Assembly (NCBI RefSeq): GCF_000143415.4
Contig: NW_003314309.1
Span: 1,053,199 to 1,117,198 of the forward strand
Direction of reading: 5' to 3'
DNA from: Selaginella moellendorffii
Taxonomy: Eukaryota > Plantae > Lycopodiophyta
Length of the DNA stretch: 64,000 nt
Of the stretch, positions 14,425-52,028 are shown piece by piece. The notes under the pieces are model-generated. The model had not been told where the DNA came from. It ran no database searches and saw nothing but the letters and a program-made list of their open reading frames with translations. Position 1 is the first letter of the stretch, and each line of letters opens with the position of its first letter. Position numbers and translations under genes: made by a program.

Positions 14425-15032
14425 CGAATCTTGGTGAAATTCCTCGCACGAATCGATCGGTCCATCCATCCCATTCCATTCCATTCCATTCGGCATTCCA
14501 TTCTCCTAAAGCGATCTCTCGCCTCTCTCGTGTGGGTGCCATTTCTGCGTGACAGCGAGCTTGTAAAAAATCTCTTTGTTTTTTCTAGTTTGTGATGGGC
14601 TTGTTCTTCGTGACGCGCCCGCCGGGGGTGGTGTGTGAGGGGAATGGCGATGGTGTCTCGAGCAATGCAAGAAATGCGAGAGTCTTGGATCGCGCAAGGG
14701 AGAGAAAGTAGATCATTGTTTCGTGATCTTCAGGTTGGCGGGTGATACGCTCTTTGGATCCACCGTAACGGCGTGATTTCTATCCTTTTCTTTTTCACCC
14801 CTGGGATCTCTACTTCTCGATCAAGCTCTAGTTTTTTCTTTCTCCCCGCTTTCGATCGCGCGAGTAGCCGCCAAAGGAAGAACAGTTTGGCCGAAATCTT
14901 GTGGTTTGTCCTCCTTGGTACGTTAGAAACAGTCGCGGCGAGGAAAGAAAAGGAAAAGAATGGGCAAAGAAAGAATCGGCTGATCACACAGGAGGGAGGG
15001 AAGAGAAGAGAAGAGAATTCCAGCTCGCGACC

Positions 15033-18000
15033 ATGATCGCGAATTTCATCGCCATTCTTGTCACTGGGCTGTGGATTTCGACGAGCAGCGGGGCGAGCGT
15101 GAATCCTCTCCTGGATTTCCGAAGTGGGCTCACCAATTCCCAGGCTCTGGGCGACTGGATCATCGGTTCGTCGCCATGCGGCGCCAAGAAATGGACAGGG
15201 ATCTCGTGCGCGTCCACGGGGGCAATCGTGGCCATCTCGCTCAGCGGCCTGGAGCTGCAAGGCCCAATCTCCGCCGCCACCGCGCTGCTAGGGCTCCCGG
15301 TACTCGAGGAGCTCGATCTCAGCAACAACGCCCTCTCGGGCGAGATCCCTCCACAGCTCTGGCAGCTGCCCAAGATCAAGCGCCTGGATCTAAGCCACAA
15401 TCTCCTCCAAGGCGCCAGCTTTGATCGGTTCGTCTCTCCACCGCCCCAAAATCTCGAGGAGCTCAATCTCGCCTCGAATTCTCTCACGGGGAGGATCGAC
15501 CTATGCGCGCTGTTGGGTGGGCAGCTCAGGAAGCTCGATCTCTCCGCGAATTTCTTCTCGAGTCTAGACCAGCAGCCGTGCGCTGGGCAGGATCAGCGCC
15601 TAGAGGAGCTTGTTCTTGGCGGAAACAGCCTCTTCGGCCACATCCCTCCATCGATCTTCTCCCTAGCGGCGCTGCGGCAGCTGGATTTGAGCAGCAATCT
15701 CTTGTCCGGCACCATCCCAGCGTCCAATCTCTCGCGCTCGCTCCAGATCCTCGACCTCGCCAACAATTCCCTCACTGGCGAGATCCCGCCCAGCATCGGT
15801 GATCTCTCCAACCTCACCGAGCTCTCTCTCGGCCTCAACTCTGCGCTGCTCGGTTCCATCCCGCCCTCCATCGGGAAACTCTCCAAGCTCGAGATCCTCT
15901 ACGCCGCCAACTGCAAGCTCACAGGTCCCATCCCTCGTTCCCTCCCGCCATCGCTCCGCAAGCTCGATCTCTCCAACAATCCCCTCCAATCGCCCATCCC
16001 GGATTCCATCGGTGATCTCTCCCGGATCCAATCCATCAGCATTGCGTCCGCGCAGCTCAATGGATCCATCCCGGCGTCGCTCGGGCGGTGCTCCAGCCTC
16101 GAGCTCCTCAATCTGGCCTTCAATCAGCTCTCCGGGCCTCTCCCTGACGATCTCGCGGCGCTGGAAAAGATCATCACGTTCTCGGTGGTGGGGAATTCGC
16201 TCTCGGGACCAATCCCGCGCTGGATCGGGCAGTGGCAGCTCGCGGACTCCATACTGCTCTCCACGAACTCGTTCTCGGGCAGTATACCGCCGGAGCTCGG
16301 GCAGTGCCGTGCGGTAACAGACCTGGGCCTGGATAACAACCAGCTCACCGGCAGCATACCGCCCGAGCTGTGCGACGCAGGTCTCCTCTCTCAGTTGACC
16401 CTTGACCACAACACGTTGACCGGGTCCCTGGCAGGCGGTACGCTGCGGCGGTGCGGCAATCTCACGCAGCTCGACGTCACCGGCAACCGGCTCACGGGTG
16501 AAATCCCGCGGTACTTCTCGGATCTCCCCAAGCTCGTGATCTTGGACATCAGCACGAATTTCTTCGTGGGATCCATCCCCGACGAGCTGTGGCACGCGAC
16601 GCAGCTCATGGAGATCTACGCGAGCGACAATCTTCTCGAGGGCGGGCTGAGCCCGCTGGTGGGAGGGATGGAGAATTTGCAGCACTTGTACCTGGATCGC
16701 AACCGGCTCAGCGGTCCGCTGCCCAGCGAGCTCGGACTTCTCAAGAGCTTGACGGTGCTCTCTCTGGCTGGGAATGCATTCGATGGGGTGATTCCACGAG
16801 AGATCTTTGGTGGTACCACTGGGTTGACGACGCTGGATCTCGGTGGCAATCGCCTTGGCGGTGCCATACCGCCCGAGATCGGTAAGCTGGTCGGGCTGGA
16901 TTGCCTGGTTCTCTCACACAACCGGCTCTCGGGGCAAATTCCAGCCGAGGTGGCGAGCTTGTTTCAGATCGCAGTGCCGCCCGAGTCGGGCTTCGTCCAG
17001 CATCACGGGGTTTTGGATCTGTCACACAACTCGCTCACGGGTCCCATTCCTTCCGGGATCGGCCAGTGCTCGGTGCTCGTGGAGCTCGATCTCTCCAACA
17101 ATTTGCTCCAGGGGAGGATACCGCCCGAGATATCTTTGCTCGCCAACCTCACCACCTTGGATCTTTCGAGCAACATGCTCCAGGGGAGGATTCCCTGGCA
17201 GCTCGGAGAGAACTCCAAGCTCCAGGGGCTCAACCTCGGGTTTAACAGGTTGACGGGGCAAATACCACCCGAGCTGGGCAACTTGGAGAGGCTGGTCAAG
17301 CTCAACATCTCGGGCAATGCTCTCACGGGATCCATCCCGGATCATCTCGGGCAGCTCTTAGGATTGAGTCACCTCGACGCCAGTGGCAATGGGCTCACTG
17401 GATCGCTCCCGGATTCCTTCTCCGGATTGGTTTCCATCGTGGGCCTGTTCCTCCAGAAGAACTCTCTCAGCGGGAGCATCGATCGGCTGCTTAGAAACAG
17501 CTTCCAGTGGCATCAGGCGCAGGCTCTCAATCTCAGCTACAATGCCCTGACCGGGGATCTCCCGAGAAGCATTGGAAACTTGACGGGTCTCTCGTTCCTC
17601 GACTTGAGCAAGAACTCGTTGACTGGCGAGATTCCAAGCGAGATTGGAGGCATCTTGCAGCTGAGCTACCTGGATCTGTCTGTGAACAAGCTCGTCGGGG
17701 GTATACCGGGTAGTCTCTGCGAGTTGACCGAGCTCGGCTTCTTCAACGTCTCGGACAATGGGTTGACGGGTGATATACCCCAGGAGGGCATATGCAAGAA
17801 CTTCTCGCGGCTCTCGTATGGTGGCAATCTAGGGCTGTGTGGATTGGCGGTGGGAGTGAGCTGTGGAGCGCTTGATGATCTTCGCGGCAATGGCGGCCAG
17901 CCCGTGCTTCTCAAACCGGGTGCCATTTGGGCGATCACCATGGCCAGCACGGTTGCGTTTTTTTGCATCGTGTTTGTGGCGATCCGGTGGAGGATGATGC

Positions 18001-19172
18001 GGCAGCAGTCGGAAGCGCTGCTGGGCGAGAAGATCAAGCTCAACAGCGGCAACCACAACAACAACAACAGCCATGGATCGACGTCGAGCTCGTCGCCATT
18101 CTCGTCCGATCGCGGCGGCTCAAGCTCCTCCAGCGGATTGAGCTGCCTCAAGAGCGTGATATCGGGTACCGCGGCCAGCACCCGGATGATCACGAGCTCG
18201 GACGGCACTAACACCGATGTGTCCCGGGAGCCACTGAGCATCAACGTCGCCATGTTTGAGAGACCGCTGCTCAAGCTCACGCTGTCCGACATCGTGACCG
18301 CGACCAACGGCTTCTCAAAGGCCAACGTGATCGGGGACGGCGGGTACGGCACGGTGTACCGCGCGGTACTGCCCGACGGCCGCACGGTGGCGGTCAAGAA
18401 GCTGGCGCCGGTCCGGGACTACCGCGCGGTAAGCAGCGGTAGCAGCTGCCGCGAGTTCCTGGCCGAGATGGAGACGCTGGGTAAGGTAAAGCACCGTAAC
18501 TTGGTAACTCTGCTGGGTTACTGCTCGTACGGCGAGGAGCGGCTGCTGGTGTACGACTACATGGTCAACGGGAGCCTTGACGTGTGGCTCCGGAATCGAA
18601 CCGACGCGCTGGAGGCCCTGACGTGGGACCGCCGGCTGCGCATCGCGGTGGGCGCGGCGCGTGGCCTGGCGTTTCTCCACCATGGGATCGTGCCACATGT
18701 CATCCATCGCGATGTCAAGGCGAGCAACATTCTCCTGGACGCCGACTTCGAGCCACGTGTCGCGGACTTTGGGCTGGCGCGGCTGATCTCGGCGTACGAC
18801 ACGCACGTCAGCACGGACATCGCCGGGACTTTCGGGTATATCCCGCCCGAGTACGGTATGACGTGGCGTGCTACGTCAAAGGGTGACGTCTACAGCTATG
18901 GCGTCATCTTGCTGGAGCTGGTGACGGGGAAGGAGCCGACTGGGCCGGACTTCAAGGACACTGAGATTGGTAACTTGGTGGGCTGGGTGAGGTCCATGGT
19001 ACGGCAGGGTAAAAGTGACGAGGTACTCGACGTGGCGGTGGCTACGCGAGCCACGTGGAGGTCCTGCATGCACCAGGTCCTCCACATTGCGATGGTGTGT
19101 ACGGCGGATGAGCCCATGAAGCGCCCGCCCATGATGGAAGTTGTACGTCAGCTCAAGGAGTTAGAGCTATAG
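15033..19172 (+). CDS. EMS1: LRR receptor kinase of the EMS1/EXS clade (LRR-X), intronless, 1379 aa
   Basis: Signal peptide from ATG 15033; long LRR array; EMS1-type island FQIAVPPESGFVQHHGVLDLS; TM; EPLSINVAMFERPLLKLTL; complete RD kinase (GDGGYG, AVKK, HRDVKASN, DFG, GTFGYIPPEY). Confidence 0.92.
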   Translation: MIANFIAILVTGLWISTSSGASVNPLLDFRSGLTNSQALGDWIIGSSPCGAKKWTGISCASTGAIVAISLSGLELQGPISAATALLGLPVLEELDLSNNALSGEIPPQLWQLPKIKRLDLSHNLLQGASFDRFVSPPPQNLEELNLASNSLTGRIDLCALLGGQLRKLDLSANFFSSLDQQPCAGQDQRLEELVLGGNSLFGHIPPSIFSLAALRQLDLSSNLLSGTIPASNLSRSLQILDLANNSLTGEIPPSIGDLSNLTELSLGLNSALLGSIPPSIGKLSKLEILYAANCKLTGPIPRSLPPSLRKLDLSNNPLQSPIPDSIGDLSRIQSISIASAQLNGSIPASLGRCSSLELLNLAFNQLSGPLPDDLAALEKIITFSVVGNSLSGPIPRWIGQWQLADSILLSTNSFSGSIPPELGQCRAVTDLGLDNNQLTGSIPPELCDAGLLSQLTLDHNTLTGSLAGGTLRRCGNLTQLDVTGNRLTGEIPRYFSDLPKLVILDISTNFFVGSIPDELWHATQLMEIYASDNLLEGGLSPLVGGMENLQHLYLDRNRLSGPLPSELGLLKSLTVLSLAGNAFDGVIPREIFGGTTGLTTLDLGGNRLGGAIPPEIGKLVGLDCLVLSHNRLSGQIPAEVASLFQIAVPPESGFVQHHGVLDLSHNSLTGPIPSGIGQCSVLVELDLSNNLLQGRIPPEISLLANLTTLDLSSNMLQGRIPWQLGENSKLQGLNLGFNRLTGQIPPELGNLERLVKLNISGNALTGSIPDHLGQLLGLSHLDASGNGLTGSLPDSFSGLVSIVGLFLQKNSLSGSIDRLLRNSFQWHQAQALNLSYNALTGDLPRSIGNLTGLSFLDLSKNSLTGEIPSEIGGILQLSYLDLSVNKLVGGIPGSLCELTELGFFNVSDNGLTGDIPQEGICKNFSRLSYGGNLGLCGLAVGVSCGALDDLRGNGGQPVLLKPGAIWAITMASTVAFFCIVFVAIRWRMMRQQSEALLGEKIKLNSGNHNNNNSHGSTSSSSPFSSDRGGSSSSSGLSCLKSVISGTAASTRMITSSDGTNTDVSREPLSINVAMFERPLLKLTLSDIVTATNGFSKANVIGDGGYGTVYRAVLPDGRTVAVKKLAPVRDYRAVSSGSSCREFLAEMETLGKVKHRNLVTLLGYCSYGEERLLVYDYMVNGSLDVWLRNRTDALEALTWDRRLRIAVGAARGLAFLHHGIVPHVIHRDVKASNILLDADFEPRVADFGLARLISAYDTHVSTDIAGTFGYIPPEYGMTWRATSKGDVYSYGVILLELVTGKEPTGPDFKDTEIGNLVGWVRSMVRQGKSDEVLDVAVATRATWRSCMHQVLHIAMVCTADEPMKRPPMMEVVRQLKELEL

Positions 19173-41111: not shown

Positions 41112-42653
41112 CTAAACTAGACGTAATTCTAAAGGGAGACCATGAGCTGGGACAGCAACCGGAGATATTTTGATTGGTTCATCAGGTTCCATAAGGGTCC
41201 AGTCGAAGCGAGTGGTAATATGATGAAGAATCACCAAGCTGTGCATTTTCACCTGTTCAATGCCCCCACAAATGCGAGGGCCTCCACCAAAGGGAAAGTA
41301 TGTATATGGATTGGGCCCAGCACGTTCAAATCTTGAAGGATCAAACTTTAGAGGATCCGGAAAGAACTCTGGCGTTGTATGACTGTTGTATACTGCCGAA
41401 AACATCTGCAAATAACTGGTATTAATTAACTGTACCTTTGAATCATGACAGTATGTATTATACGACAGTACCTGCCATCCTTTGGGAATGGTGTATCCTT
41501 CGAGTTCGACGTCAGTAAGTGTTTTCCTGGCAACAGCTGGTGCAGTGGGTCTCAGCCTTAGACTTTCTTGGACGACTCTCCACGAGTACTTCATTTGCTT
41601 CAAGTCTAGTGGTTCCAGTGGTTCTCGTGGACGTTTGAACGATCCTATTTCGCAATGAACTGTCCATAAAATCGTATAAAATCGCTTCAGGGTTTAAAGG
41701 ACTTCCCTTGGACTACTCTCACCTCTTTTCATTTCTTTGTAGACTGTCTGGTTCTCCACAAGGCTCTTGATAGTCATTGATATTGAGCTTGCACTAAGTT
41801 CGTGCCCGGAGACTAGCAATCCCAAAATGTTGTGCGTGATTTCATTGTCTGTCATTGCAGTTCCCTCCTTCGATCTGGTGGACAGCAGCATTGATAAGAG
41901 ATCTTGATCACGAGCTGGTGAAAGCTGTGAGTTTATTCTTCTCTTAGCTATGTGTTTTTCAAGTATGTTGCATATTTCCTTTTGTCCCAACTTTGCTCTG
42001 TGGAAGGCTGTTCCAGGAAGATTGACTGGTATACTGATTATCCCATGGATCACCTTCTCAAACGGTTCCATGAGTTCCATTACCTCTTTCTCGTCTGTTA
42101 AGCCGAGGTACATGTTGCATACGATGGAGAACAAGCATCTCTTGATCAGTGGATATACACGGACAAGCTCTCCAGTAGGCCAGGAGTCCAGGTGTTTCTG
42201 AACAATGACGCTGGTGCTAGTTACATACCTTTTCATGCATTCTGGACCCAGGAATGAAGTTATCAGTTGGCGAGAGCCGCTTGCGTCTGGGCGAACAAAA
42301 GCACTCTCGGGAAACAATTTTATAACCGGCACAGGCCATGACTTGGTGATAAGTGTATGGTTGGTGTCAGCGAACATGAACCTGGTGCCGACAGGTGGGG
42401 AAACAACAACAACAGGCATCCCAAACAACCGGGTTTTGTACACCTTTCCATACTTGGCTTCTCTAACTCTGAAGAACTCCCAAGGCTGGTTGCTTACTAA
42501 AGACCGAAGAAATGGCAGAGTTTCACCAATGAATGGCAATCCCATGTTCCCGGGTGGGAGAGAAGCATGTTTTCTTTTTCTATTTCTATTTGTGAAGGTA
42601 AACCAAATCACTGAAATGACAAACAACAGCACGAAAAACAATGCCTGAGACAT
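41112..42653 (-). CDS. Cytochrome P450, CYP85 clan, CYP716-like; exons 42653-41723, 41659-41472, 41405-41112
   Basis: N-terminal anchor, LPPGNMGLPFIGET, PGTAFHRA, MKYSWRVVQESLRL (ExxR), GYTIPKGW, KFDPSRF, PYTYFPFGGGPRICGG (heme Cys). Confidence 0.92.
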
Positions 42654-43858: not shown

Positions 43859-46800
43859 TGTGAGTGCATGGAATATGGAAAGGGAATACAAAAAATGTGC
43901 ATATCAATTAGCCCAAAAATCTTAACTTATATACAAAAGAAAATGGTCCAGATTAAAACCAATCTAATGGCTACTAAAATCTCACTATGCTAATGTTAGT
44001 ATACAACATTGTAACTATACACTTGAACTTCATATTACCTCTTCTTGGAATAATGGAAGACAATTGTTCCTAGTCCTTTTGTATGAAGTGTTTCAACTGT
44101 TGTATATTCACAATTTCTGGTAGATCAGCCTATTGGATGTCATGCCAAACCTCATAAAATTGCCTGATACGGTCCTTTCCATTAAGCAAAGAGCCTCTTA
44201 GATAAACCATGTACCATAAGATGGGGAAAATAGACTAACACCAAATCATCCACTTTGTACTTCGCAGGTGAACGATGATGGGGGTTGTAATGCCGTTGTT
44301 ATCCCACTTGTATGTGGCCAAAGTGTTTGGTAAACTTTATTTGAACAAGTAAAAGAATGCTCATCAAATACTTATCCTATAACCTAGCATCGATAACTCG
44401 TAATAATCATACAGGTAAATCCAACTTCGTTGGTAATATTGGATCATGACCATATAGGAGTTTATATGGTGAAGCATTAATAAAACTCTGCACCCCTGTG
44501 ACATATGCATACCCAAGAGACGGCAAATAACCATCCCAGTCTGAATACTGAAAGTTCATGTACTTCGTAATTATCCCTTTGAATGTCCAAACAAGCTATT
44601 CCATCAAACCGTTTAATTGTGGATAATAAGCACTTATGAAAGTGTGGCATATCACCAAGCGAAATGTCAAAACATGAAATACCTCAATTATAAATGTGGG
44701 ACCATTATTCGAAAGAATCTGCTTCGAACAAAAATGCTGGAACACCACTTGATTAAGGAGGAAGTATCCAACAGTAAGTGCAAAGGCACTAACAAAAACA
44801 CCAACTTCCATCTAACAAGTCAAATAGTCAGAAGTAATAATAACATACTCACTATCAATAATCTATCGTGGAAAAGATCTTATAAGATCAAATGCCACCA
44901 ACTCAAATGGATGAAGAATTGCAATTGACTTCAACCGTCCTTCGACAACACGAGGGGGAGTATTACAAGTTTAGTACCAAATGCAATTACACATATGTTG
45001 GATAACATCATGTCACATCTTCGGCTAATAAAAATACTTATGCAGCTTCTCAATCACATGACAATGTCTCATATGCCCGCATAGAATAGGAGAATCATGG
45101 TAGGCATGGAAAAACCGTGGAATAAAGATTGAAGGCATCACCAGCTGTAAATGATCATCAAGATTTGTCCTCATAAAATAAAGAAGGCTATTTTTTAGGC
45201 GATATTGAGAATGTAAATGCCAGAATGACAAATCATCAACAAGTGATGCAGGATTTTCAAACTCATCTCGAAGCTTTCGAATCCATAGCTCAACCTGTTG
45301 AGCTTTGCAAACTTTATTAAGAGAAAGTAATTTTGCTCTACACTTTGTGGACACTGAATGTCAAGTATAACAACTACCGATAGTAGAAAATCTTCGTCTA
45401 GAAAATCCATAGATGCTAGAACAATAAGCTTATAAAAAACATAAGAAGAAAGTGAAGAAGAAAGAGGAGCTCGAAAAAGGGCATTAGTATCAAGCATAAA
45501 ACTCCCCGGGTGATGAATAACATCAAAATCATATATTTGAAGCTTCAAAGCCCACCGAGCAGTATGACCAATTAGGTTTTTTTACTTCAATAATGAAGTA
45601 ATGGCAACATGATCACCTTTTAGTAATGTCCTAAAACCATGTAGATATACATGAAGTTTCTCAAAACCTTAAATTGTTACTAAACACTCCTTCTCTATCG
45701 TGGAGTAATTTACCTCTGTTGGTTATAATATATGGTTTATATATACAATGGGATGGCACTGACTAAGCACACTTGAGCTTTCTTGCATCAACACAACTCT
45801 AAGACCAATATCAAAAGCATCCATATGTAAAATGAAAGGTTAAGTGTAGTCAGGATACTCCAAAACTGGAGGAGTTGTCAATACTTCTTTGAGATCCATG
45901 AATGCTCGCTCACAATTTGTAGACCAAATGAAAGATGACGTTGATGACTTTAGCAACGCTTGCAACAGTGCAGTGTGATTAGAAAGATGATCCACAAAAT
46001 GACCTAGATATTGCACATCATTCACACATTTCGGAATAGGAAATTTTATAACAGCCATAAGTTTGTTAGAATCAACTTGTAAACCCTTATGAGAAATACA
46101 GTACATTAGACCCAAACATGCATTTTAACCACTTCAACTTTAAACCAACTTTTTATAGCTGATCCAACACTTTACAAATATCATGAACCTATTCCTTTCA
46201 CATCCCCTCCGAGTGGATCAAGACATCATTAATGAAGTCAGCAATCATCTTTAGCATATTGCAAAGAACCTAGTCCATCATTCGCTAAAAAATCACTAAA
46301 GCATTGTTCAAACTAAATGGCATCACCAAGAATTCATACAAAACAAATAGTGTATATAAAATAGTCTTAGGAATATCTTTTTTTAGCCCTTGGTACTTGT
46401 CAGTACCCAAAAGAAAGATTGAGCTTGGTGACCCAACGACTTCTCCCCAACTGATCTAAGAGATCAGCAGTGTGAAAAAGAAGGTACACATTTGAGATTA
46501 TCACTTCATTTAACAAATGATAGTCGAGGCAAAAACAAATACTCACATCAAACTTCGTCAAAAGATAAAATTCACATGCTAAGGATTCCACGACATTCGA
46601 ATAACACCATTTTCCAACATTTCCTTAGCGTTTGCATGTAAAATCTTAATCTTTTTAGGTGACCAATGATGAACATAAACCTTAATTAGACGAGCATTTT
46701 CAGTTAGAATCGGATGACATGTGGCAATCTTGGCTTCAGACAATATGTCAAATTTAAAGAGATCGGCATACTCCTTTATGAGCTGGTCAACCGCTGTAAC

Positions 46801-48301
46801 ACAAAAACCGTTGGAGGGATCGGAAAAGGGAAAAGTGGAACAAAATGGAAACATAAGAGGAAGTAATAAGAGATAAAAGTAATGGAAGCAAAGGTAGAAT
46901 CAGAAAGACCAAAAGATTCAAAAGTGAGAGGAATGGATAAAATATAAAGAAGTATAAAATAAGGGGGAGAAGCCTCAAAGTACATTTGGCATGATTATCT
47001 TGCAACTAATCTATATCAAAAATAAAGTCAAAAACTTGACTTGGCACCATTTGCAATTACTCAAATCAAAGCTCAAGATTGCCTATACACACAATAAGGT
47101 CCACCTCATCCTATGCACATGTATGTGTACAGTCGTTGCCATAAAGAATGAAAACTAGTTCTACCACATGATGCAAATCAACAATGAACATCATGGCCAT
47201 GACCACGTCCTCACTCTTGTCCTTAAACTCAAGCAGTAGCAACATCAACCTCCATTGGAATAAGACCATCTCCCATATGAAATGGGGTTGAAGGATGTGC
47301 AACAAGAAGTGAAAGAGGTGGCGACATTTTATAACATTGTGCCAAGCAAAGGGTATTGTCAAAGGTAGCTAAAGCAAGTGCATGCACAAGTTCTACAAGA
47401 TCTTCATGAAGTGCTAGCCACAATATCCCCAGCTTGATCTACTTTGACATATTTGGCTTTGCATGAAGCAAAAATCTTTGGAAATAAATGTCAAATTGCA
47501 TCATCGACTCAGATAGCCCTTAATAAAGATGATGCAATTATTAGAAAGCATCATCACAATCGTCAACCTATCTGAATGTGCATTTGAAGATGTCCATGAG
47601 AATATTTCAATCCTCACAAGTGGCTACATTCAAACCATTATATCACTACAGCACCATCCCTTAGAAATATGTGGGAAACTCATGTAAATATCGAGCATCA
47701 TCTTAAGAATGATATGTAGCAATCATTGTGAAATGATGGAACTAGTAAAACACATCATCCCCAGGATTCCCACGAAAGAACTCGGATTGGCACCAAAAAA
47801 AAAAGGAGTTGTACCACATGCCATGAATGTTGCCATCAACTGAGTTTAGTTATGCAATTGCAATTATATAATATCAAGCAATTGTACCAATTGCTGCTCC
47901 AAAGTGAAAGGAGGAAGAGATTGTTACTCTATCATGAAGATGAATAAAAATGAAAGAGCAAAAAAAAAGAAATGAAAAAAGTTAGAAGGAAAGGGAGATC
48001 TAAACAATGCAAAGGCTAGATTTAAACCAAAATCTTGAAAGGAAAAAACAAAAGAAAGGAAATAGAAAAAGCTAGATCTAGACAATACAAAAAGTTAAAG
48101 TTAAACTAAAATCCCAAATCTAAACATTCTTCAGGGACAATTAAAAATGCCCTTCACCTCCATTGATGTGAGTGCATGAAATATGGAAAGGGAATACAGA
48201 AAATATATATATTAATTAACCCAAAAACCTTAAGTTATATACAGGTCTAGATTGAAATTAATCCGACAATTATAATAGTAAACATACACTTAAACCTCAC
48301 A
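43859..48301 (-). mobile_element. Full-length but decayed short-LTR Ty3/gypsy retrotransposon
   Basis: LTRs 43859-44034 and 48167-48301 (outer ends TGTGAG...CTCACA); flanking CATT/CATT duplication; PPT adjacent to 44035. RT (DLLDQLG..KLNL..GY), RNase H (LTTPPVL.YPD; LQIYDFDVIHHPG) and integrase remnants in gypsy order. Confidence 0.88.
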
Positions 48302-48356
48302 CATTTGAGTTAAGAGAAAAGCTTTTGGGTTACTTATTTTTACAAATGGTTTAAAG

Positions 48357-50294
48357 CTACTTTCGTGTAAGTAAACTCCCCAGACTTTCCCAGAACAAAA
48401 TACAAAAGCTCCATAGCAAGAAACAAGCTGCTCCCGTTACCATCCCTGCCAATACCTCATCATGATCATCATTCCCTACCTCCTTCTCAGGTGTTGATCC
48501 TTCATGATCCGGTTCCTGGCACTGTGAAATAGGCGATCCACATAGCCCTGAATTCCCTTGGAACGAACTCAATGGAAACGTCGTCAACTGACCCTTCTGC
48601 GGAATCCCTCCCGATAAATTGTTGAACGAGACATTGAAATCCATGAGCGGGAGCCTGGAGAATGATACAGGTATCACACCAGTGAACAAGTTGCTCGACA
48701 GATCCACAGTACTCAATCGCTTGAGAAAGCCAAGGCTGGAAGGAATGCGGCCAGACATTCGGTTCCTTGCCAGGCTGATCTGATACAGACTCTGCATGTC
48801 TCCAAACTCCACAGGAATAGCGCCGGTAAACAGGTTTCCAGACAGGTCCACTAATACCAGACTGTCAATCTCCGGGAAGAGCTTGTCCTGGTAGATGTAC
48901 AGCCGCTTGTTACACACCATAGGAGCTTTGGTCTGAAACTCCTGGATGCTAATGCCGAGAAGGGGGAAAATCGAGTTGATGCCCCGGTTTCCAGGGCACT
49001 TATACGCTTCGTTGTTATCAAACACCAGCCGAAATTCCCTTGTTGTGTTGTCCACGAGCGGGGCTGGCTTTGATCGCCCTATGCGAGGAGGAATCTCTCC
49101 CGTGAGACGGTTGTTGTTGAGATCTAGCCATGCAAGCTTCTCACATCCAGAGAGTTCACCAGGAAGCTCACCTTCGAGAGAGTTGTTACTGACGGCAAGC
49201 ACTGTGAGTCGCTTCAGCTGCCCGAGAGATGAGGGAATTGTTCCAGACAGGTTGTTGCTGCTCAGGATCAACCATTCCAGGCTGTGGAGCTTGGAGACCT
49301 CGGGAGGAATGGGACCTTGGAGGTTGTTGAAGCTAAGGATGAGAGTGACTAATGAGCTGCATTTAGATATGGTCGTAGGTACAGGACCGTGAAGCTCATT
49401 TGACCAGACGGCAAAGTGCTCCAGTTTAGATGTCTTCTCGCAGAGGTCAGTTGGGATTTCTCCGCTGATTGTATTGAAGCTCAGATCCAACACCTTGAGC
49501 TTTCGGCAAAGGAGAATGGTATGGAGGAACGGACCCGTCAACCTGTTGTTTGAAATGATGAGTTCTTCCAATTCCGAGCCAGTGCTCGAGCATATATCCC
49601 TCATGACATCTCCGTTTGTGAATCTATTGGAGCTTAAGTTGAGAATCCTAAGCTTCGAAGGGAGAGAAGCGGGGAGATCACCTGTGAAGCTATTATGGCT
49701 GGCATTCAGGGTCTTCAGGTTTCGAGCACACAGGTTGATCACTTGTTCAACGTCTCCAGACAAGAGGTTGTGGGAGATGTCTAGAGCTTCCAAGCTTTTG
49801 CAACTAGTGAGAGAAGACACAGACAATGATCCGTACATGAGATTGTGTGAGAGATTGAGAAGCTTGAGCCTTGTGCATGCATCAAGAATGCTGACGCTAT
49901 CACTGGAAGTGATTCTGTTGTTTGAGATATCTAGATACTCCAATGAGCACTCTGATGAACTGTTCGACGAGGAGATGGGGGAGATAGTAAGATTGTTGCC
50001 CGACAAGAACAAGCCCTGTAGATGAGATAAATCTCCAATGACATCGAAGGGAATGGCACCAGATAATGATTTGAACCGGAGATCCAGCCTAATCACCAGG
50101 CCATCTGGTGAACATGTTACACCATTCCACTGACATAAGACACTGGTAGTCTTTGAACTCCAACTGTTTAGAGCAGCGGATGGATCTTCCAGTGAAGTCT
50201 TCAAGCGGAGAAGTGTCGTTGCATCAGTTGATCTATTACCAAGTACCAGTTCCAAAGCTTGCAAGATGATTAGCTGGAGAAAGAGTAGATTCAT
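48357..50294 (-). CDS. LRR receptor-like protein (no kinase) with a BRI1/BRL-like island domain, intronless, 645 aa
   Basis: Signal peptide, LRRNT (CQWNGVTC), LRR array, ~70-aa Cys-pair island, terminal LRRs, GNSGLCGSPI cap, acidic juxtamembrane, GxxxG TM and a ~10-aa tail. Confidence 0.9.
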   Translation of the reverse strand: MNLLFLQLIILQALELVLGNRSTDATTLLRLKTSLEDPSAALNSWSSKTTSVLCQWNGVTCSPDGLVIRLDLRFKSLSGAIPFDVIGDLSHLQGLFLSGNNLTISPISSSNSSSECSLEYLDISNNRITSSDSVSILDACTRLKLLNLSHNLMYGSLSVSSLTSCKSLEALDISHNLLSGDVEQVINLCARNLKTLNASHNSFTGDLPASLPSKLRILNLSSNRFTNGDVMRDICSSTGSELEELIISNNRLTGPFLHTILLCRKLKVLDLSFNTISGEIPTDLCEKTSKLEHFAVWSNELHGPVPTTISKCSSLVTLILSFNNLQGPIPPEVSKLHSLEWLILSSNNLSGTIPSSLGQLKRLTVLAVSNNSLEGELPGELSGCEKLAWLDLNNNRLTGEIPPRIGRSKPAPLVDNTTREFRLVFDNNEAYKCPGNRGINSIFPLLGISIQEFQTKAPMVCNKRLYIYQDKLFPEIDSLVLVDLSGNLFTGAIPVEFGDMQSLYQISLARNRMSGRIPSSLGFLKRLSTVDLSSNLFTGVIPVSFSRLPLMDFNVSFNNLSGGIPQKGQLTTFPLSSFQGNSGLCGSPISQCQEPDHEGSTPEKEVGNDDHDEVLAGMVTGAACFLLWSFCILFWESLGSLLTRK

Positions 50295-50695
50295 CACAAC
50301 AAGGTTGGAGGTTTGGAAACGCTATAGGGATTTGCTTAGACCATGACTTGTTGAGGTCCTATTATTTATTTCACTTGAAGCCGAAGCTGTTTCTCTCTAA
50401 AAGTTCCAGTTGTAGGTCCCTCTCTCAAAGACTAGTGCAATGTAGGTCCTATGGTCTTTGGTCGTGAGTGCAAAGACTAGTGCAATGCTATTGTCTTTGG
50501 TAGAGGACCACAAAGAAAAAGTCAGACGACGTGCTTTTAAAGCGAAAGTCAGTCTTAGCACTAGTTTGAATATTACTATGCATGCAAGGGAGCTCGTGAC
50601 TCGAGGCTCTAGAAAAACTAGCTTTTTGACCATACACATACTACATTAACAACTATCTTCTGGTCATTCGGGTTTCAGGACTCCTTCACTTGGCA

Positions 50696-52028
50696 ATGGA
50701 TTTTCTCCGTTACCTCTTTGGATGCAAAGGGCAGAGCGGATATGGATCGTCAACCACAGCGGAGCAAGTCGCTGACGGCATTTCTTTGTCCTCCTACACC
50801 GCCATTGTGACTGGTAAGAAGTACAAATTCCTGGGACTCGTTTAGATCCAAGAGTAGTGCCTCAGGAGCAACATCTGGCATTGGAGTAGAAACTGCAAGG
50901 GTGCTAGCAAAACAAGGCGCTTGTGTGGTTATTCCCGTGCGGAAGCTCCAATCCGGGGAGGAAGTGCGATGCAAAATCTTGCAAGAGTTTCCGGATGCAA
51001 ATGTTGCCATCTTAGAGCTTGATCTGAGCTCCCTCAAATCCGTGCGGAAGTTTGTGGCCAATTTCAAAGCTCTTAAGCTCCCTCTCAACATTCTCATGTA
51101 AGTCATTCGATTCTCAATCTGGACTGAGAATTCTTTAGAAACAATGCAGGAATTGCTGCTGGAAAATTCGTTCTGTCGGAAGATGGTCTTGAGCTAGATT
51201 TCGCAACAAATTATATGGGTATTTTTAAATAAATAAGATTTAAAAAACAATTGCTGGCCGTCTATTTTTCATAGGCCATTTCCTGCTAGTTGAGCTGCTA
51301 ATAGAGGATATGATCAAAACGGCAAGGGAGAGTGGCAAGGAGGGAAGGATCGTAATCGTGTCTTCAGAGGCGCATAGGTTCACACCAACTGGTGGAATAG
51401 CCTTGGACAAGATAAACGACAAAAAAAGGTTTTTTCTTTCAAGTTCCGCTAGAGACTTGACATGTTTGAAGTTGTTGTGACTCTAGCTTTTGGTATGCGA
51501 CCTCTTATGGTCAATCGAAACTGGCAAACTTGCTCCATTGCAAGGAGCTCTCCAAGAGGTTACAGGTTGATATGCAGATTTTAAATACTCCAGACAAAGA
51601 ACGGTGTATGTGTTGCAGGAAATGGGAGACGTCAATGTAACAGTCAATGCTTTACATCCGGGTAGCATCAGCACTGGCATTGGACGTGATTTCAACGCAT
51701 TGTTCACAAGTATGACACTTACTGAACCTGAACTAGATGATGAACTTTGTGTTTTTGCAGGGACAATATTTGCATTGGGATCTCCATTCCTGAAAAACGT
51801 TTCACAGGTTTGGATTGGAGATTTGTTTAATGCCATGGTTTGAAGCGTCCAGGGAAACAGGGAGCTGCTACAACGGTTTATGCTGCAGTTCATCCGTCAC
51901 TCAAAGGTATCAGTGGCAAATACCTTATGGATTGCAATGAAGCGGATTGTCACGCTAATGCAAAGGACATGAAACTGGCCAACAAGCTCTGGGCGTTTAG
52001 TATGACCTTTTTATCATCTCTTAGCTGA
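50696..52028 (+). CDS. Short-chain dehydrogenase/reductase, TIC32/retinol-dehydrogenase-like; 8 exons
   Basis: [18 protein letters not shown]|[42 protein letters not shown] (YxxxK), LHPG, QGAATT.Y.A.HP..KLW.FS. Confidence 0.93.

What the first reader, a model, noticed from the sequence alone, without database searches (positions are those of the whole stretch)
48357..50294. Kinase-less receptor with a brassinosteroid-receptor-like island domain
Seen: WLDLNNNRLTGEIPPRIGR, then a ~70-aa island (~48860-49085) with two Cys (YKCPG...LLGI...MVCNKRLY), then VDLSGN..G.IP.EFGDM.SL and IPQKGQLTTFP..F.GN.GLCG.P..C. This closely follows my recollection of BRI1/BRL ectodomains, especially BRL2 (WLDLNTN.LTGEIPPRLGR...C.G....F.GI...C...R.Y). 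The acidic juxtamembrane and GMVTG (GxxxG) TM are hallmarks of genuine RLPs, not of a broken kinase. Known: a canonical BRI1 is generally reported as absent from Selaginella. Inference: this may be a relic or precursor of the steroid-binding ectodomain that signals through a partner kinase.
Basis: partly seen in the sequence, partly recalled or inferred. Interest (0 to 1): 0.75.

Follow-up and report, generated by a model that had tools for sequence, protein, structure and literature searches.

The report
Kinase-less BRI1-like receptor in Selaginella
This spikemoss gene makes a cell-surface protein whose outer part descends from the plant steroid-hormone receptor family (BRI1/BRL) but has no kinase; it shows that Selaginella does carry BRI1-family genes despite published statements, though whether this one holds a steroid is untested and looks doubtful.

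Summary
Window 48357-50294 (minus strand) is one intact, intronless 645-codon gene of Selaginella moellendorffii. It encodes a signal peptide, LRRNT cap, 14 LRRs, a 70-aa island with two Cys, 4 LRRs, C-cap, an acidic stretch, a GxxxG transmembrane helix and a 10-aa tail. There is no kinase.

The island matches BRI1/BRL islands in length and register. Profile-profile comparison gives 94.5% against BRI1/BRL and 0.08% against canonical RLP islands.

With island columns removed, the gene and five kinase-less Selaginella paralogs form a clade (100/96) sister to seed-plant BRI1/BRL1-3 (100/98). Grouping with ordinary RLPs is rejected (AU p 0.0008).

An AlphaFold model overlays BRI1 at TM 0.90, but island confidence is low.

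All paralogs end at the same point after the membrane helix, so kinase loss is old and not caused by the retroelement downstream. A transcript contig matches the ORF exactly.

Steroid binding is not supported. Only 8 of 24 conserved island positions survive, and Tyr replaces BRI1 Gly644. The essential Trp564 and Tyr642 equivalents are kept, in this paralog only.

The scan had already noted three paralogs on other pieces of this genome. RefSeq already holds this 645-aa protein. BRI1-like RLPs in general were reported in 2024.

The parts
48357..50294 (-). Complete intronless coding sequence (645 codons plus stop) of the kinase-less BRI1/BRL-lineage receptor-like protein
   Evidence: The exact 645-aa product is already in NCBI/UniRef (P0373). 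A 1991-nt transcript contig covers window 48333-50323 with 0 differences.
50238..50294 (-). Signal peptide, aa 1-19 (MNLLFLQLIILQALELVLG)
   Evidence: Read directly from the sequence. It is a hydrophobic N-terminus ahead of the LRRNT. No predictor was run.
50106..50231 (-). LRRNT_2 N-terminal cap, aa 22-63, with the Cys54/Cys61 pair
   Evidence: Pfam PF08263, E 1e-11. Cys positions.
49074..50099 (-). LRR 1-14, aa 66-407. LRR14 carries W389, the equivalent of BRI1 Trp564.
   Evidence: Repeat count. The W column is 100% conserved in 53 BRI1/BRL sequences and is kept here, but not in the paralogs.
48861..49073 (-). Island domain, aa 408-478, about 70 aa, with Cys433 and Cys461, G447-I448 and R464-L-Y466
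   Evidence: Same length and register as BRI1/BRL islands. hhalign gives 94.5%, E 8e-8 against the BRI1/BRL island profile and 0.08% against the canonical RLP island profile. Pfam PF20141 gives no hit. AF2 pLDDT is 50-70.
48519..48860 (-). LRR 15-18 (the C3 region) and the C-terminal cap, aa 479-592, with the GQLTT (QxxT/S) loop and Cys585/Cys592
   Evidence: The QxxT/S SERK-contact loop is defined in PMC10834447.
48456..48518 (-). Acidic extracellular juxtamembrane stretch, aa 593-613 (9 D/E and 1 K in 21 residues)
48390..48455 (-). Transmembrane helix, aa 614-635 (VLAGMVTGAACFLLWSFCILFW), with G617xxxG621
   Evidence: The GxxxG motif is absent from most paralogs.
48357..48389 (-). Ten-residue cytoplasmic tail (ESLGSLLTRK) and stop codon
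   Evidence: The tail is homologous to the paralog tails ...W(E)ALLKRL(I).

Best explanation
This is an intact gene, transcribed at a low level or in few tissues, for a single-pass membrane receptor-like protein. Its ectodomain belongs to the BRI1/BRL lineage: 18 LRRs with a 70-aa island placed four repeats before the end. The kinase was lost before a Selaginella-specific family of at least six loci diversified.

Shown: the anatomy, the homology of the island, the sister position to seed-plant BRI1/BRL, the shared kinase-less C-terminus of all paralogs, a matching transcript contig, and purifying selection on a paralog.

Inferred mechanism: a ligand is bound in the groove between the island and the inner LRR surface. 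The last four LRRs, which keep the QxxT/S loop, then recruit a SERK co-receptor. Because the protein has only a 10-aa tail, output must go through partner kinases. These would be the SERK and probably a constitutively bound adaptor kinase of the SOBIR1 type, engaged through the acidic juxtamembrane stretch and the GxxxG helix.

The ligand is unknown. The fast-diverging island and the loss of most BRI1/BRL-conserved island residues argue for paralog-specific ligands rather than a conserved hormone. Still, this paralog alone keeps the Trp564 and Tyr642 equivalents, so weak or altered steroid binding is not excluded.
For: The ORF is intact.

Kinase absence:
- Pfam finds no kinase.
- tblastn finds no kinase remnant nearby.
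- All paralogs end 10-15 aa after the membrane helix with a homologous tail.
- Paralog loci L001 and L002 are intronless and are followed by unrelated genes.

BRI1/BRL affinity:
- Only BRI1 and BRL1-3 chains align across the island plus flanks; PSKR1 and RXEG1 align only to the last four LRRs.
- The island profile matches BRI1/BRL at 94.5% against 0.08% for RLP islands.
- The tree built without island columns gives Selaginella clade 100/96, union with BRI1/BRL 100/98, and seed-plant BRI1/BRL 96/91.
- The AU test rejects union with canonical RLPs, p 0.0008.
- The AF2 model has pLDDT 86.9. Its 22 best Foldseek PDB matches are all BRI1 or BRL1-3 chains, with TMq up to 0.90 and rmsd 2.4 A over 355 of 360 columns.

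Other support:
- A transcript contig covers 48333-50323 with no coverage in the flanking intergenic DNA, in a run whose neighbouring-gene contig is spliced.
- dN/dS is 0.36 between the two copies of paralog P0055/P0374; the deficit of amino-acid changes has binomial p 0.007.
- The QxxT/S loop, acidic juxtamembrane stretch and GxxxG are present. Their roles are described in PMC10834447.
Against: - Three raw RNA-seq runs (about 12% of each read) gave no read on the ORF, so expression is weak or restricted.
- The transcript evidence is a single assembled contig from a run whose RNA status is a guess.
- GxxxG is not conserved in most paralogs, so the SOBIR1-type link is weak.
- No PSKR/PSY1R, true EMS1, NILR1, fern, moss or hornwort BRL could be fetched for the tree. 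The exact branching point and the direction of kinase loss therefore rest partly on the literature.
- The AF2 alignment contained BRI1/BRL sequences, so the island model (pLDDT 50-70) is not independent evidence.
- No orthologue outside S. moellendorffii was found.
- No selection estimate exists for this gene itself.
Confidence: 0.72

Rival explanations
1. One reading: the protein is a working brassinosteroid-binding ectodomain, the missing Selaginella BR sensor, which signals through a partner kinase.
For: - The lineage is BRI1/BRL.
- W389, the equivalent of BRI1 Trp564, is kept here and in none of the paralogs. The same holds for R464 and Y466, the equivalents of Arg640 and Tyr642.
- PMC13481262 reports that Trp564 is the one essential pocket residue, that Tyr642 positions the ligand, that the pocket tolerates many substitutions, and that even BRL2 binds C28 brassinosteroids.
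- Selaginella responds to brassinosteroids and to propiconazole but has no known receptor (PMC3862569).
- The QxxT/S SERK loop is kept.
Against: - Only 8 of 24 conserved island positions are kept.
- Tyr replaces Gly644, and G644D (bri1-6) strongly reduces binding.
- The Tyr597 and Tyr599 strand reads RLVFD, with no aromatic residue at the aligned positions.
- The Pfam Island model does not match.
- The island is the most variable part among the paralogs, which is unlike a conserved hormone pocket.
- The island is modelled with low confidence.
- Expression is very low in three RNA-seq runs.
Confidence: 0.13
2. The protein is a non-signalling decoy or modulator, or a gene sliding towards pseudogenisation. 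It is a truncated receptor that merely titrates a ligand or SERKs, or does nothing.
For: - No reads in three RNA-seq runs.
- No orthologue found elsewhere.
- The gene sits in AT-rich DNA next to a degenerate retroelement.
- Man et al. 2020 (PMC7318236) discuss truncated LRR-only paralogues as possible microprotein-like interferers.
Against: - A 1.9-kb ORF is fully open.
- The LRR scaffold, both cap cysteine pairs and the SERK loop are kept.
- A transcript contig exists.
- The family has persisted through at least six loci with the same architecture, and a paralog shows dN/dS 0.36.
Confidence: 0.12
3. The protein is an ordinary LRR-RLP of the immune type, or a PSKR-type ectodomain, that only superficially resembles BRI1.
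For: - It shares the island-plus-four-LRR layout, an acidic juxtamembrane stretch, a GxxxG helix and a short tail with canonical RLPs (PMC10834447).
- Whole-protein scores against GSO1 and FLS2 are as high as against BRLs, because repeat scores add up.
Against: - The AU test rejects a clade with RLPs, p 0.0008.
- The island profile matches RLP islands at 0.08%.
- There is no Yx8KG or Kx5Y motif.
- PSKR1 and RXEG1 align only to the last four LRRs.
- Foldseek gives TMq 0.43 for PSKR1 against 0.90 for BRI1.
Confidence: 0.03

Closest known systems
Arabidopsis BRL2/VH1 ectodomain (PDB 9S9C, 9U0G) and angiosperm and gymnosperm BRL2 orthologues
   Same: - LRR ectodomain with a 70-aa, two-Cys island four LRRs before the C-cap.
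- The WLDLN.N.LTGEIPPR.GR motif ahead of the island.
- 39-43% identity over aa 385-600 for sequences named BRL2.
- phmmer aligns the whole island region.
- A Selaginella+BRL2 clade is not excluded (AU p 0.051).
   Different: - 18 LRRs against 21.
- No juxtamembrane or kinase domain.
- An acidic juxtamembrane stretch and a GxxxG helix.
- Most conserved island residues are replaced, including the Gly644 equivalent.
- The best tree puts the Selaginella clade outside all seed-plant BRI1/BRL.
BRI1, BRL1 and BRL3 steroid receptors (PDB 3RJ0, 4J0M, 9S80)
   Same: - The best structural matches of the model, with TMq 0.86-0.90.
- The Trp564, Arg640 and Tyr642 equivalents, both island cysteines and the GI motif are kept.
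- The QxxT/S loop is kept.
   Different: - No kinase.
- Seven fewer LRRs than BRI1.
- No Pfam Island match.
- The Tyr597, Tyr599 and Gly644 equivalents are lost.
- Steroid binding is untested.
BRI1/BRL-like LRR-RLPs reported by Ngou et al. 2024 (PMC10834447)
   Same: Kinase-less proteins whose ectodomains fall in the BRI1/BRL clade. Their function is unexplored.
   Different: - Those described are highly similar to BRL1/BRL3 and keep the BR-binding residues. P0086, P0110 and P0115 in my tree, which nest inside BRL1/3, look like this kind.
- The Selaginella family is a deep, lineage-wide kinase-less clade with a diverged island, in a plant said to lack BRI1/BRL altogether.
- Selaginella is not mentioned in that paper's main text.
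Canonical immune LRR-RLPs (RXEG1, EIX2, RLP23, Cf-type)
   Same: - Island plus four LRRs.
- Acidic juxtamembrane stretch, GxxxG helix and short tail.
- Presumed dependence on SERK and SOBIR1 partners.
   Different: - The island is unrelated.
- No Yx8KG or Kx5Y motif.
- They are phylogenetically separate.
Paralogs in the same genome, named 'BRI1-like' by similarity in NCBI RefSeq: XP_024535501 (P0055), XP_024523835 (P0374), XP_024536526 (P0037), XP_024526155 (P0375). Also P0021, P0023, P0029 and P0014.
   Same: The same architecture and kinase-less end, at 37-40% identity. Three were noted earlier by this scan.
   Different: This gene is the earliest-branching member. It is the only one that keeps the WLDL Trp and the R-x-Y of the island, and the only full-length one with GxxxG.

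Membership tests
BRI1/BRL clade of LRR-RLK-Xb | An island of about 70 aa inserted in the LRR solenoid, four LRRs before the C-terminal cap | tested here: met
   Island aa 408-477 is followed by LRR15-18 and the cap. Its length is identical to BRI1/BRL islands.
BRI1/BRL clade of LRR-RLK-Xb | Match to the Pfam Island model PF20141 | tested here: not met
   No hit even at E<=10 for aa 366-505 or for paralogs P0001, P0014 and P0055. The control, Typha BRL2, scores 7e-20.
BRI1/BRL clade of LRR-RLK-Xb | Island homologous to BRI1/BRL islands by profile-profile comparison | tested here: met
   hhalign gives 94.5%, E 8e-8, over 47 columns with Cys-GI-Cys in register. The control against RLP islands gives 0.08%.
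BRI1/BRL clade of LRR-RLK-Xb | Phylogenetic placement with BRI1/BRL using the LRR columns only | tested here: met
   Sister to seed-plant BRI1/BRL, support 100/98. Caveat: PSKR/PSY1R, true EMS1, NILR1 and non-seed BRLs are not in the tree.
BRI1/BRL clade of LRR-RLK-Xb | Cytoplasmic Ser/Thr kinase domain | tested here: not met
   No Pfam kinase and no tblastn remnant. The tail is 10 aa. The transcript contig ends 24 nt past the stop.
BRI1/BRL clade of LRR-RLK-Xb | Steroid-pocket residues, in BRI1 numbering: Trp564, Tyr597, Tyr599, Leu615, Tyr642, Gly644 | tested here: inconclusive
   Trp564 is kept as W389 and Tyr642 as Y466. Leu615 is Ile (conservative). Tyr597 and Tyr599 align to R and V in RLVFD. 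Gly644 is Y468. Residue roles are from PMC13481262.
BRI1/BRL clade of LRR-RLK-Xb | Binds brassinosteroids | not testable with these tools
   This needs purified ectodomain and binding assays.
Canonical SOBIR1-dependent LRR-RLP | No kinase, short cytoplasmic tail, island plus four LRRs | tested here: met
Canonical SOBIR1-dependent LRR-RLP | Negatively charged extracellular juxtamembrane stretch and GxxxG in the membrane helix | tested here: met
   The juxtamembrane stretch has 9 D/E against 1 K, and G617xxxG621 is present. GxxxG is missing in most paralogs.
Canonical SOBIR1-dependent LRR-RLP | Yx8KG or Kx5Y motif in the island | tested here: not met
   A regex search of aa 408-478 finds neither.
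Canonical SOBIR1-dependent LRR-RLP | Clusters with RLPs in the ectodomain tree | tested here: not met
   The AU test rejects the union, p 0.0008.
Canonical SOBIR1-dependent LRR-RLP | Constitutive association with SOBIR1 and ligand-induced SERK recruitment | not testable with these tools
   Only the QxxT/S loop (GQLTT) could be checked, and it is present.

The most novel reading that the evidence does not exclude
This paralog, the only family member that keeps the essential Trp564 and Tyr642 equivalents, is the ligand-binding half of a split brassinosteroid receptor. It binds a Selaginella brassinosteroid with an altered island and signals through a separate kinase. That kinase could be a SERK, a SOBIR1-like adaptor, or an EMS1-type kinase whose intracellular domain is interchangeable with that of BRI1 (PMC6744412). 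One such receptor kinase lies 30 kb away in this window. If true, this would explain how Selaginella responds to brassinosteroids without a BRI1 kinase.
Probability: 0.1. Interest if true: 0.9.

Novelty: new variant of a known kind. Interest (0 to 1): 0.55.

Why it matters
Papers from 2013 to 2026 state that Selaginella has no BRI1/BRL homologue and that ligand-binding BRI1-type receptors appear only in seed plants or ferns (PMC3862569, PMC9223546, PMC6744412, PMC13261678). Yet Selaginella grows in response to brassinosteroids.

Searches keyed on the kinase would miss a family whose kinase is gone. This gene and its paralogs show that the BRI1/BRL ectodomain, island included, was present in the lycophyte lineage and survives there as kinase-less receptor-like proteins.

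That changes the account of when the island-bearing ectodomain arose. It also gives concrete candidates, this one being the best conserved, for a direct test of brassinosteroid binding in a lycophyte.

The finding is tempered in three ways. RefSeq already labels these proteins 'BRI1-like' by similarity. BRI1-like RLPs as a class were noted in 2024. The sequence evidence leans against classical steroid binding.

Tried and rejected
- **Exhaustive representative search with the whole protein.** The top 150 were giant multi-LRR fusion models whose repeat scores add up, so it was useless for phylogeny. Whole-protein E-values also rank GSO1 and FLS2 beside BRLs. I therefore relied on stretches that span the island, on profile comparison and on a tree.
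- **Word search with the island alone.** It found only the gene itself, so no orthologue was recovered. This says little, given the method.
- **Fetching PSKR/PSY1R, true EMS1, NILR1 and fern or bryophyte BRLs.** None was obtained within the three search calls. The 'EXS-like' Davidia protein P0347 proved RLP-like in the tree.
- **Retroelement truncation.** I considered that the element at 44596-47423 had cut off a kinase. This is rejected: there is no kinase remnant, the next gene downstream is a P450, and the paralogs share the same end.
- **Linkage to brassinosteroid synthesis.** I asked whether the downstream P450 was a CYP90 enzyme. It is CYP85-clan but closer to CYP725A4 than to CYP90B1, so no case can be made.
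- **Raw RNA-seq.** Three runs gave zero reads on the ORF, so transcript ends and strand could not be measured.
- **Liu et al. 2024 (pmid 38757845).** The paper is not held.
Full report
**What is there**

Window 48357-50297 on the minus strand is a single open reading frame. The first codon listed is GTG, but the next codon is ATG at 50294, which gives a 645-aa protein. The stop is at 48357-48359, followed by AT-rich 3' sequence.

Read directly, the protein has these parts:
- a hydrophobic signal peptide (aa 1-19);
- an LRRNT_2 cap with a Cys pair (Pfam 1e-11);
- 14 LRRs (aa 66-407);
- a 70-aa non-LRR island (aa 408-477) with Cys433 and Cys461;
- four more LRRs and a C-terminal cap with Cys585 and Cys592;
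- a 21-residue acidic stretch, QEPDHEGSTPEKEVGNDDHDE;
- a membrane helix, VLAGMVTGAACFLLWSFCILFW, containing GxxxG;
- a tail of ten residues.

Where aligned, the protein is identical to SELMODRAFT_31808. That older partial model wrongly splices out aa 71-165. The exact 645-aa product is already in NCBI, UniRef and EukProt. The genome is therefore Selaginella moellendorffii, and the gene is annotated.

**It is truly kinase-less**

- Pfam finds no kinase.
- tblastn with two BRL2 kinase domains finds nothing between the stop codon and the next gene. Downstream on the same strand lie a degenerate Ty3/gypsy-like element (44596-47423) and then a P450 (41112-42653).
- Five paralogous S. moellendorffii proteins of 37-40% identity (P0055, P0029, P0023, P0037, P0021; P0014 is a fused model) have the same architecture. 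They end 10-15 residues after the membrane helix with a recognisably homologous tail.
- At the two copies of the P0055 locus the gene is intronless. An unrelated DUF829 gene on the other strand follows about 400 bp later.

The loss of the kinase therefore predates the family's diversification. It has nothing to do with the retroelement next to this copy.

**Expression**

Three 2026 raw RNA-seq runs, about 12% of each read, gave no read on the ORF, although the neighbouring SDR-like gene was covered.

One older run, held as contigs, behaves as RNA: its contig for the neighbouring gene skips two 52-nt GT..AG introns. That run contains a 1991-nt contig equal to window 48333-50323 with no differences, and nothing in the intergenic DNA on either side. 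I take this as evidence of a low-level or tissue-restricted unspliced transcript. It is one contig from a run whose RNA status is a guess.

**Which family**

Whole-protein scores are unreliable for LRR proteins, because repeat scores add up. GSO1 scores as well as BRL1, and the exhaustive representative search returned only giant LRR fusions. I used four tests that do not have this flaw.

1. *PDB search with the island region only.* With aa 380-600 as query, only BRI1, BRL1, BRL2 and BRL3 chains align across the whole piece including the island. PSKR1 and the RLP RXEG1 align only to the last four LRRs.
2. *Island-only profile comparison.* The island profile of the Selaginella family matches a BRI1/BRL island profile with hhalign probability 94.5% and E 8e-8, over 47 columns with Cys-GI-Cys in register. 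Against a profile of canonical RLP islands the probability is 0.08%.
3. *Tree without the island.* A maximum-likelihood tree (LG+C20, 52 sequences, 338 columns) of the C-terminal 400 residues, with all island columns removed, gives these supports:
   - Selaginella proteins as one clade, 100/96;
   - that clade joined to seed-plant BRI1+BRL1/3+BRL2, 100/98;
   - the seed-plant group itself, 96/91.

   Canonical RLPs (EIX, RLP12 and RLP35 types, plus a moss and a fern RLP) lie elsewhere. The AU test rejects a Selaginella+RLP clade (p 0.0008) but not a Selaginella+BRL2 clade (p 0.051).
4. *Structure model.* An AlphaFold2 model of aa 239-598 has mean pLDDT 86.9. Its 22 best Foldseek matches in the PDB are all BRI1 or BRL1-3 chains. 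TMq reaches 0.90 with rmsd 2.4 A over 355 of 360 columns, against 0.43 for PSKR1.

There are caveats. The model's alignment contained BRI1/BRL sequences, and the island itself has pLDDT of only 50-70. The Pfam Island model PF20141 does not match, even at E<=10. The tree lacks PSKR/PSY1R, true EMS1, NILR1 and non-seed BRLs, which I could not fetch.

**Is it a steroid pocket?**

In 53 seed-plant BRI1/BRL sequences, 55 columns between aa 370 and 500 are at least 85% conserved. This protein keeps 34 of them, but only 8 of the 24 that lie in the island.

Kept:
- W389, a column that is 100% Trp and corresponds to BRI1 Trp564;
- both island cysteines;
- G447-I448;
- R464 and Y466, corresponding to BRI1 Arg640 and Tyr642.

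Lost:
- the strand carrying Tyr597 and Tyr599, which reads RLVFD here;
- Glu617, Arg622 and several glycines;
- Gly644, which is Tyr468 here.

According to PMC13481262:
- the pocket is plastic;
- Trp564 is the one essential residue, with W564H causing a 100-fold loss of binding;
- Tyr599 and Tyr642 position the ligand;
- G644D strongly reduces binding;
- BRL2 binds C28 brassinosteroids moderately.

The picture here is therefore mixed. None of the paralogs keeps the Trp or the R-x-Y, so this gene is the most BRL-like member.

Against a conserved hormone pocket, the island is the fastest-changing part of the family:
- Island identity among paralogs is 13-24%, against about 40% overall.
- Between the two copies of P0055, the island holds 5 of the 19 amino-acid differences (Fisher p 0.036).
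- Island dN/dS is 0.68 against 0.26-0.36 elsewhere, on small counts.

Overall dN/dS for that paralog is 0.36, with a significant deficit of amino-acid changes (p 0.007). The family is therefore under purifying selection.

**Mechanism**

The following steps are inferred, not shown. A ligand binds in the groove between the island and the inner LRR face. The last four LRRs keep the QxxT/S loop (GQLTT) that BRI1, PSKR1 and RXEG1 use to contact SERKs (PMC10834447), so SERK recruitment is likely. With a ten-residue tail, output must come from partner kinases.

The acidic juxtamembrane stretch and the GxxxG helix are the hallmarks that tie canonical RLPs to SOBIR1. That kinase family is reported throughout embryophytes. 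However, GxxxG is missing in most paralogs, so this link is tentative.

**Comparison with what is known**

- Cheon et al. 2013 (PMC3862569) concluded that Selaginella lacks a BRI1 homologue and an island domain.
- Zheng et al. 2022 (PMC9223546) and a 2026 review (PMC13261678) repeat this.
- PMC6744412 says BRI1 is absent from non-flowering plants.
- Ngou et al. 2024 noted kinase-less counterparts inside the BRI1/BRL clade, highly similar to BRL1/3, with unexplored function. They do not mention Selaginella in the main text.
- Man et al. 2020 showed that LRR-only paralogues of LRR-RLKs are common and long-lived.
- RefSeq names the paralogs 'BRI1-like 2', 'BRI1-like 3' or 'BRASSINOSTEROID INSENSITIVE 1' by similarity.
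- This scan had already followed up three paralogs on other pieces of the genome, with the same conclusion.

The kind is therefore known. What is not in the papers I could read is a deep-branching, wholly kinase-less BRI1/BRL-lineage family, with a homologous island, in the plant said to have none.

**Relic or precursor?**

All outgroups in the tree are receptor kinases. The literature places BRL kinases in ferns, Sphagnum and hornworts. Loss of the kinase in the Selaginella line is the simpler reading. I could not test this directly.

**Verdict**

The lineage and the kinase-less state hold. A steroid-binding function is neither shown nor favoured, at about 0.13.
- Interest is moderate. The gene is a concrete, testable candidate for an open question about brassinosteroid perception in lycophytes, but it is already annotated, its paralogs have been noted before, and a non-steroid ligand is more likely.

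Noticed in passing
window 14901-19172 (+): An intact ORF of 1423 aa, with the likely start Met at 15033 giving 1379 aa. It encodes a full LRR receptor kinase with a short EMS1-like island (...FQIAVPPESGFVQHHGVLDLSHN). Pfam Pkinase scores 2e-40. Its kinase is 54-56% identical to BRL2 kinases, and it is 37% identical to Typha BRL2 over 1107 aa. It may be the 'closest BRI1 homologue' Sm99902 of Cheon 2013, but this is unverified. It lies 30 kb from the kinase-less gene.
   Followed up: partly
window 41112-42653 (-): A two-exon cytochrome P450 of the CYP85 clan (LPPG..G.P.IGET start, PFGGGPRICGG haem motif). Its best PDB matches are taxadiene 5-alpha-hydroxylase CYP725A4 (5e-42) and CYP90B1 (1e-28). 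It is not clearly a brassinosteroid-synthesis CYP90.
   Followed up: partly
window 44596-47423 (-): A degenerate Ty3/gypsy-like retroelement with broken RT, RNase H and integrase ORFs and a weak RT_RNaseH_2 hit. It sits in AT-rich DNA directly downstream of the receptor gene and does not interrupt it.
   Followed up: partly
window 50785-52028 (+): A short-chain dehydrogenase-like gene that is expressed in the RNA-seq runs. It has two 52-nt GT..AG introns at 50813-50864 and 51098-51149.
   Followed up: no
window 48167-48202: A 36-nt piece, 155 nt downstream of the stop codon, appears in RNA reads and in a 255-nt contig with unrelated sequence on both sides. It carries an A>G difference at 48179. 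It could be a repeat fragment or an exon-like piece of a transcript from elsewhere.
   Followed up: no
L001:3001-5064 and L002:3001-5064 (GL377590.1 and GL377568.1): Two syntenic copies of paralog P0055/P0374, probably the two haplotypes of the assembly. They are 97.2% identical in protein, with dS 0.034 and dN/dS 0.36. The island holds 5 of the 19 amino-acid differences.
   Followed up: yes
P0014 (940 aa) and EFJ17639/P0001 (509 aa): Two gene-model problems in public records. P0014 has two LRRNT domains and looks like two neighbouring genes fused into one model. SELMODRAFT_31808 removes aa 71-165 of this gene as a false intron.
   Followed up: partly
P0086, P0110, P0115 (Malania, Durio): Angiosperm proteins named 'BRI1-like 3' with no kinase Pfam hit nest inside the BRL1/3 clade. 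They are probably examples of the BRL-like RLPs described by Ngou et al. 2024.
   Followed up: no
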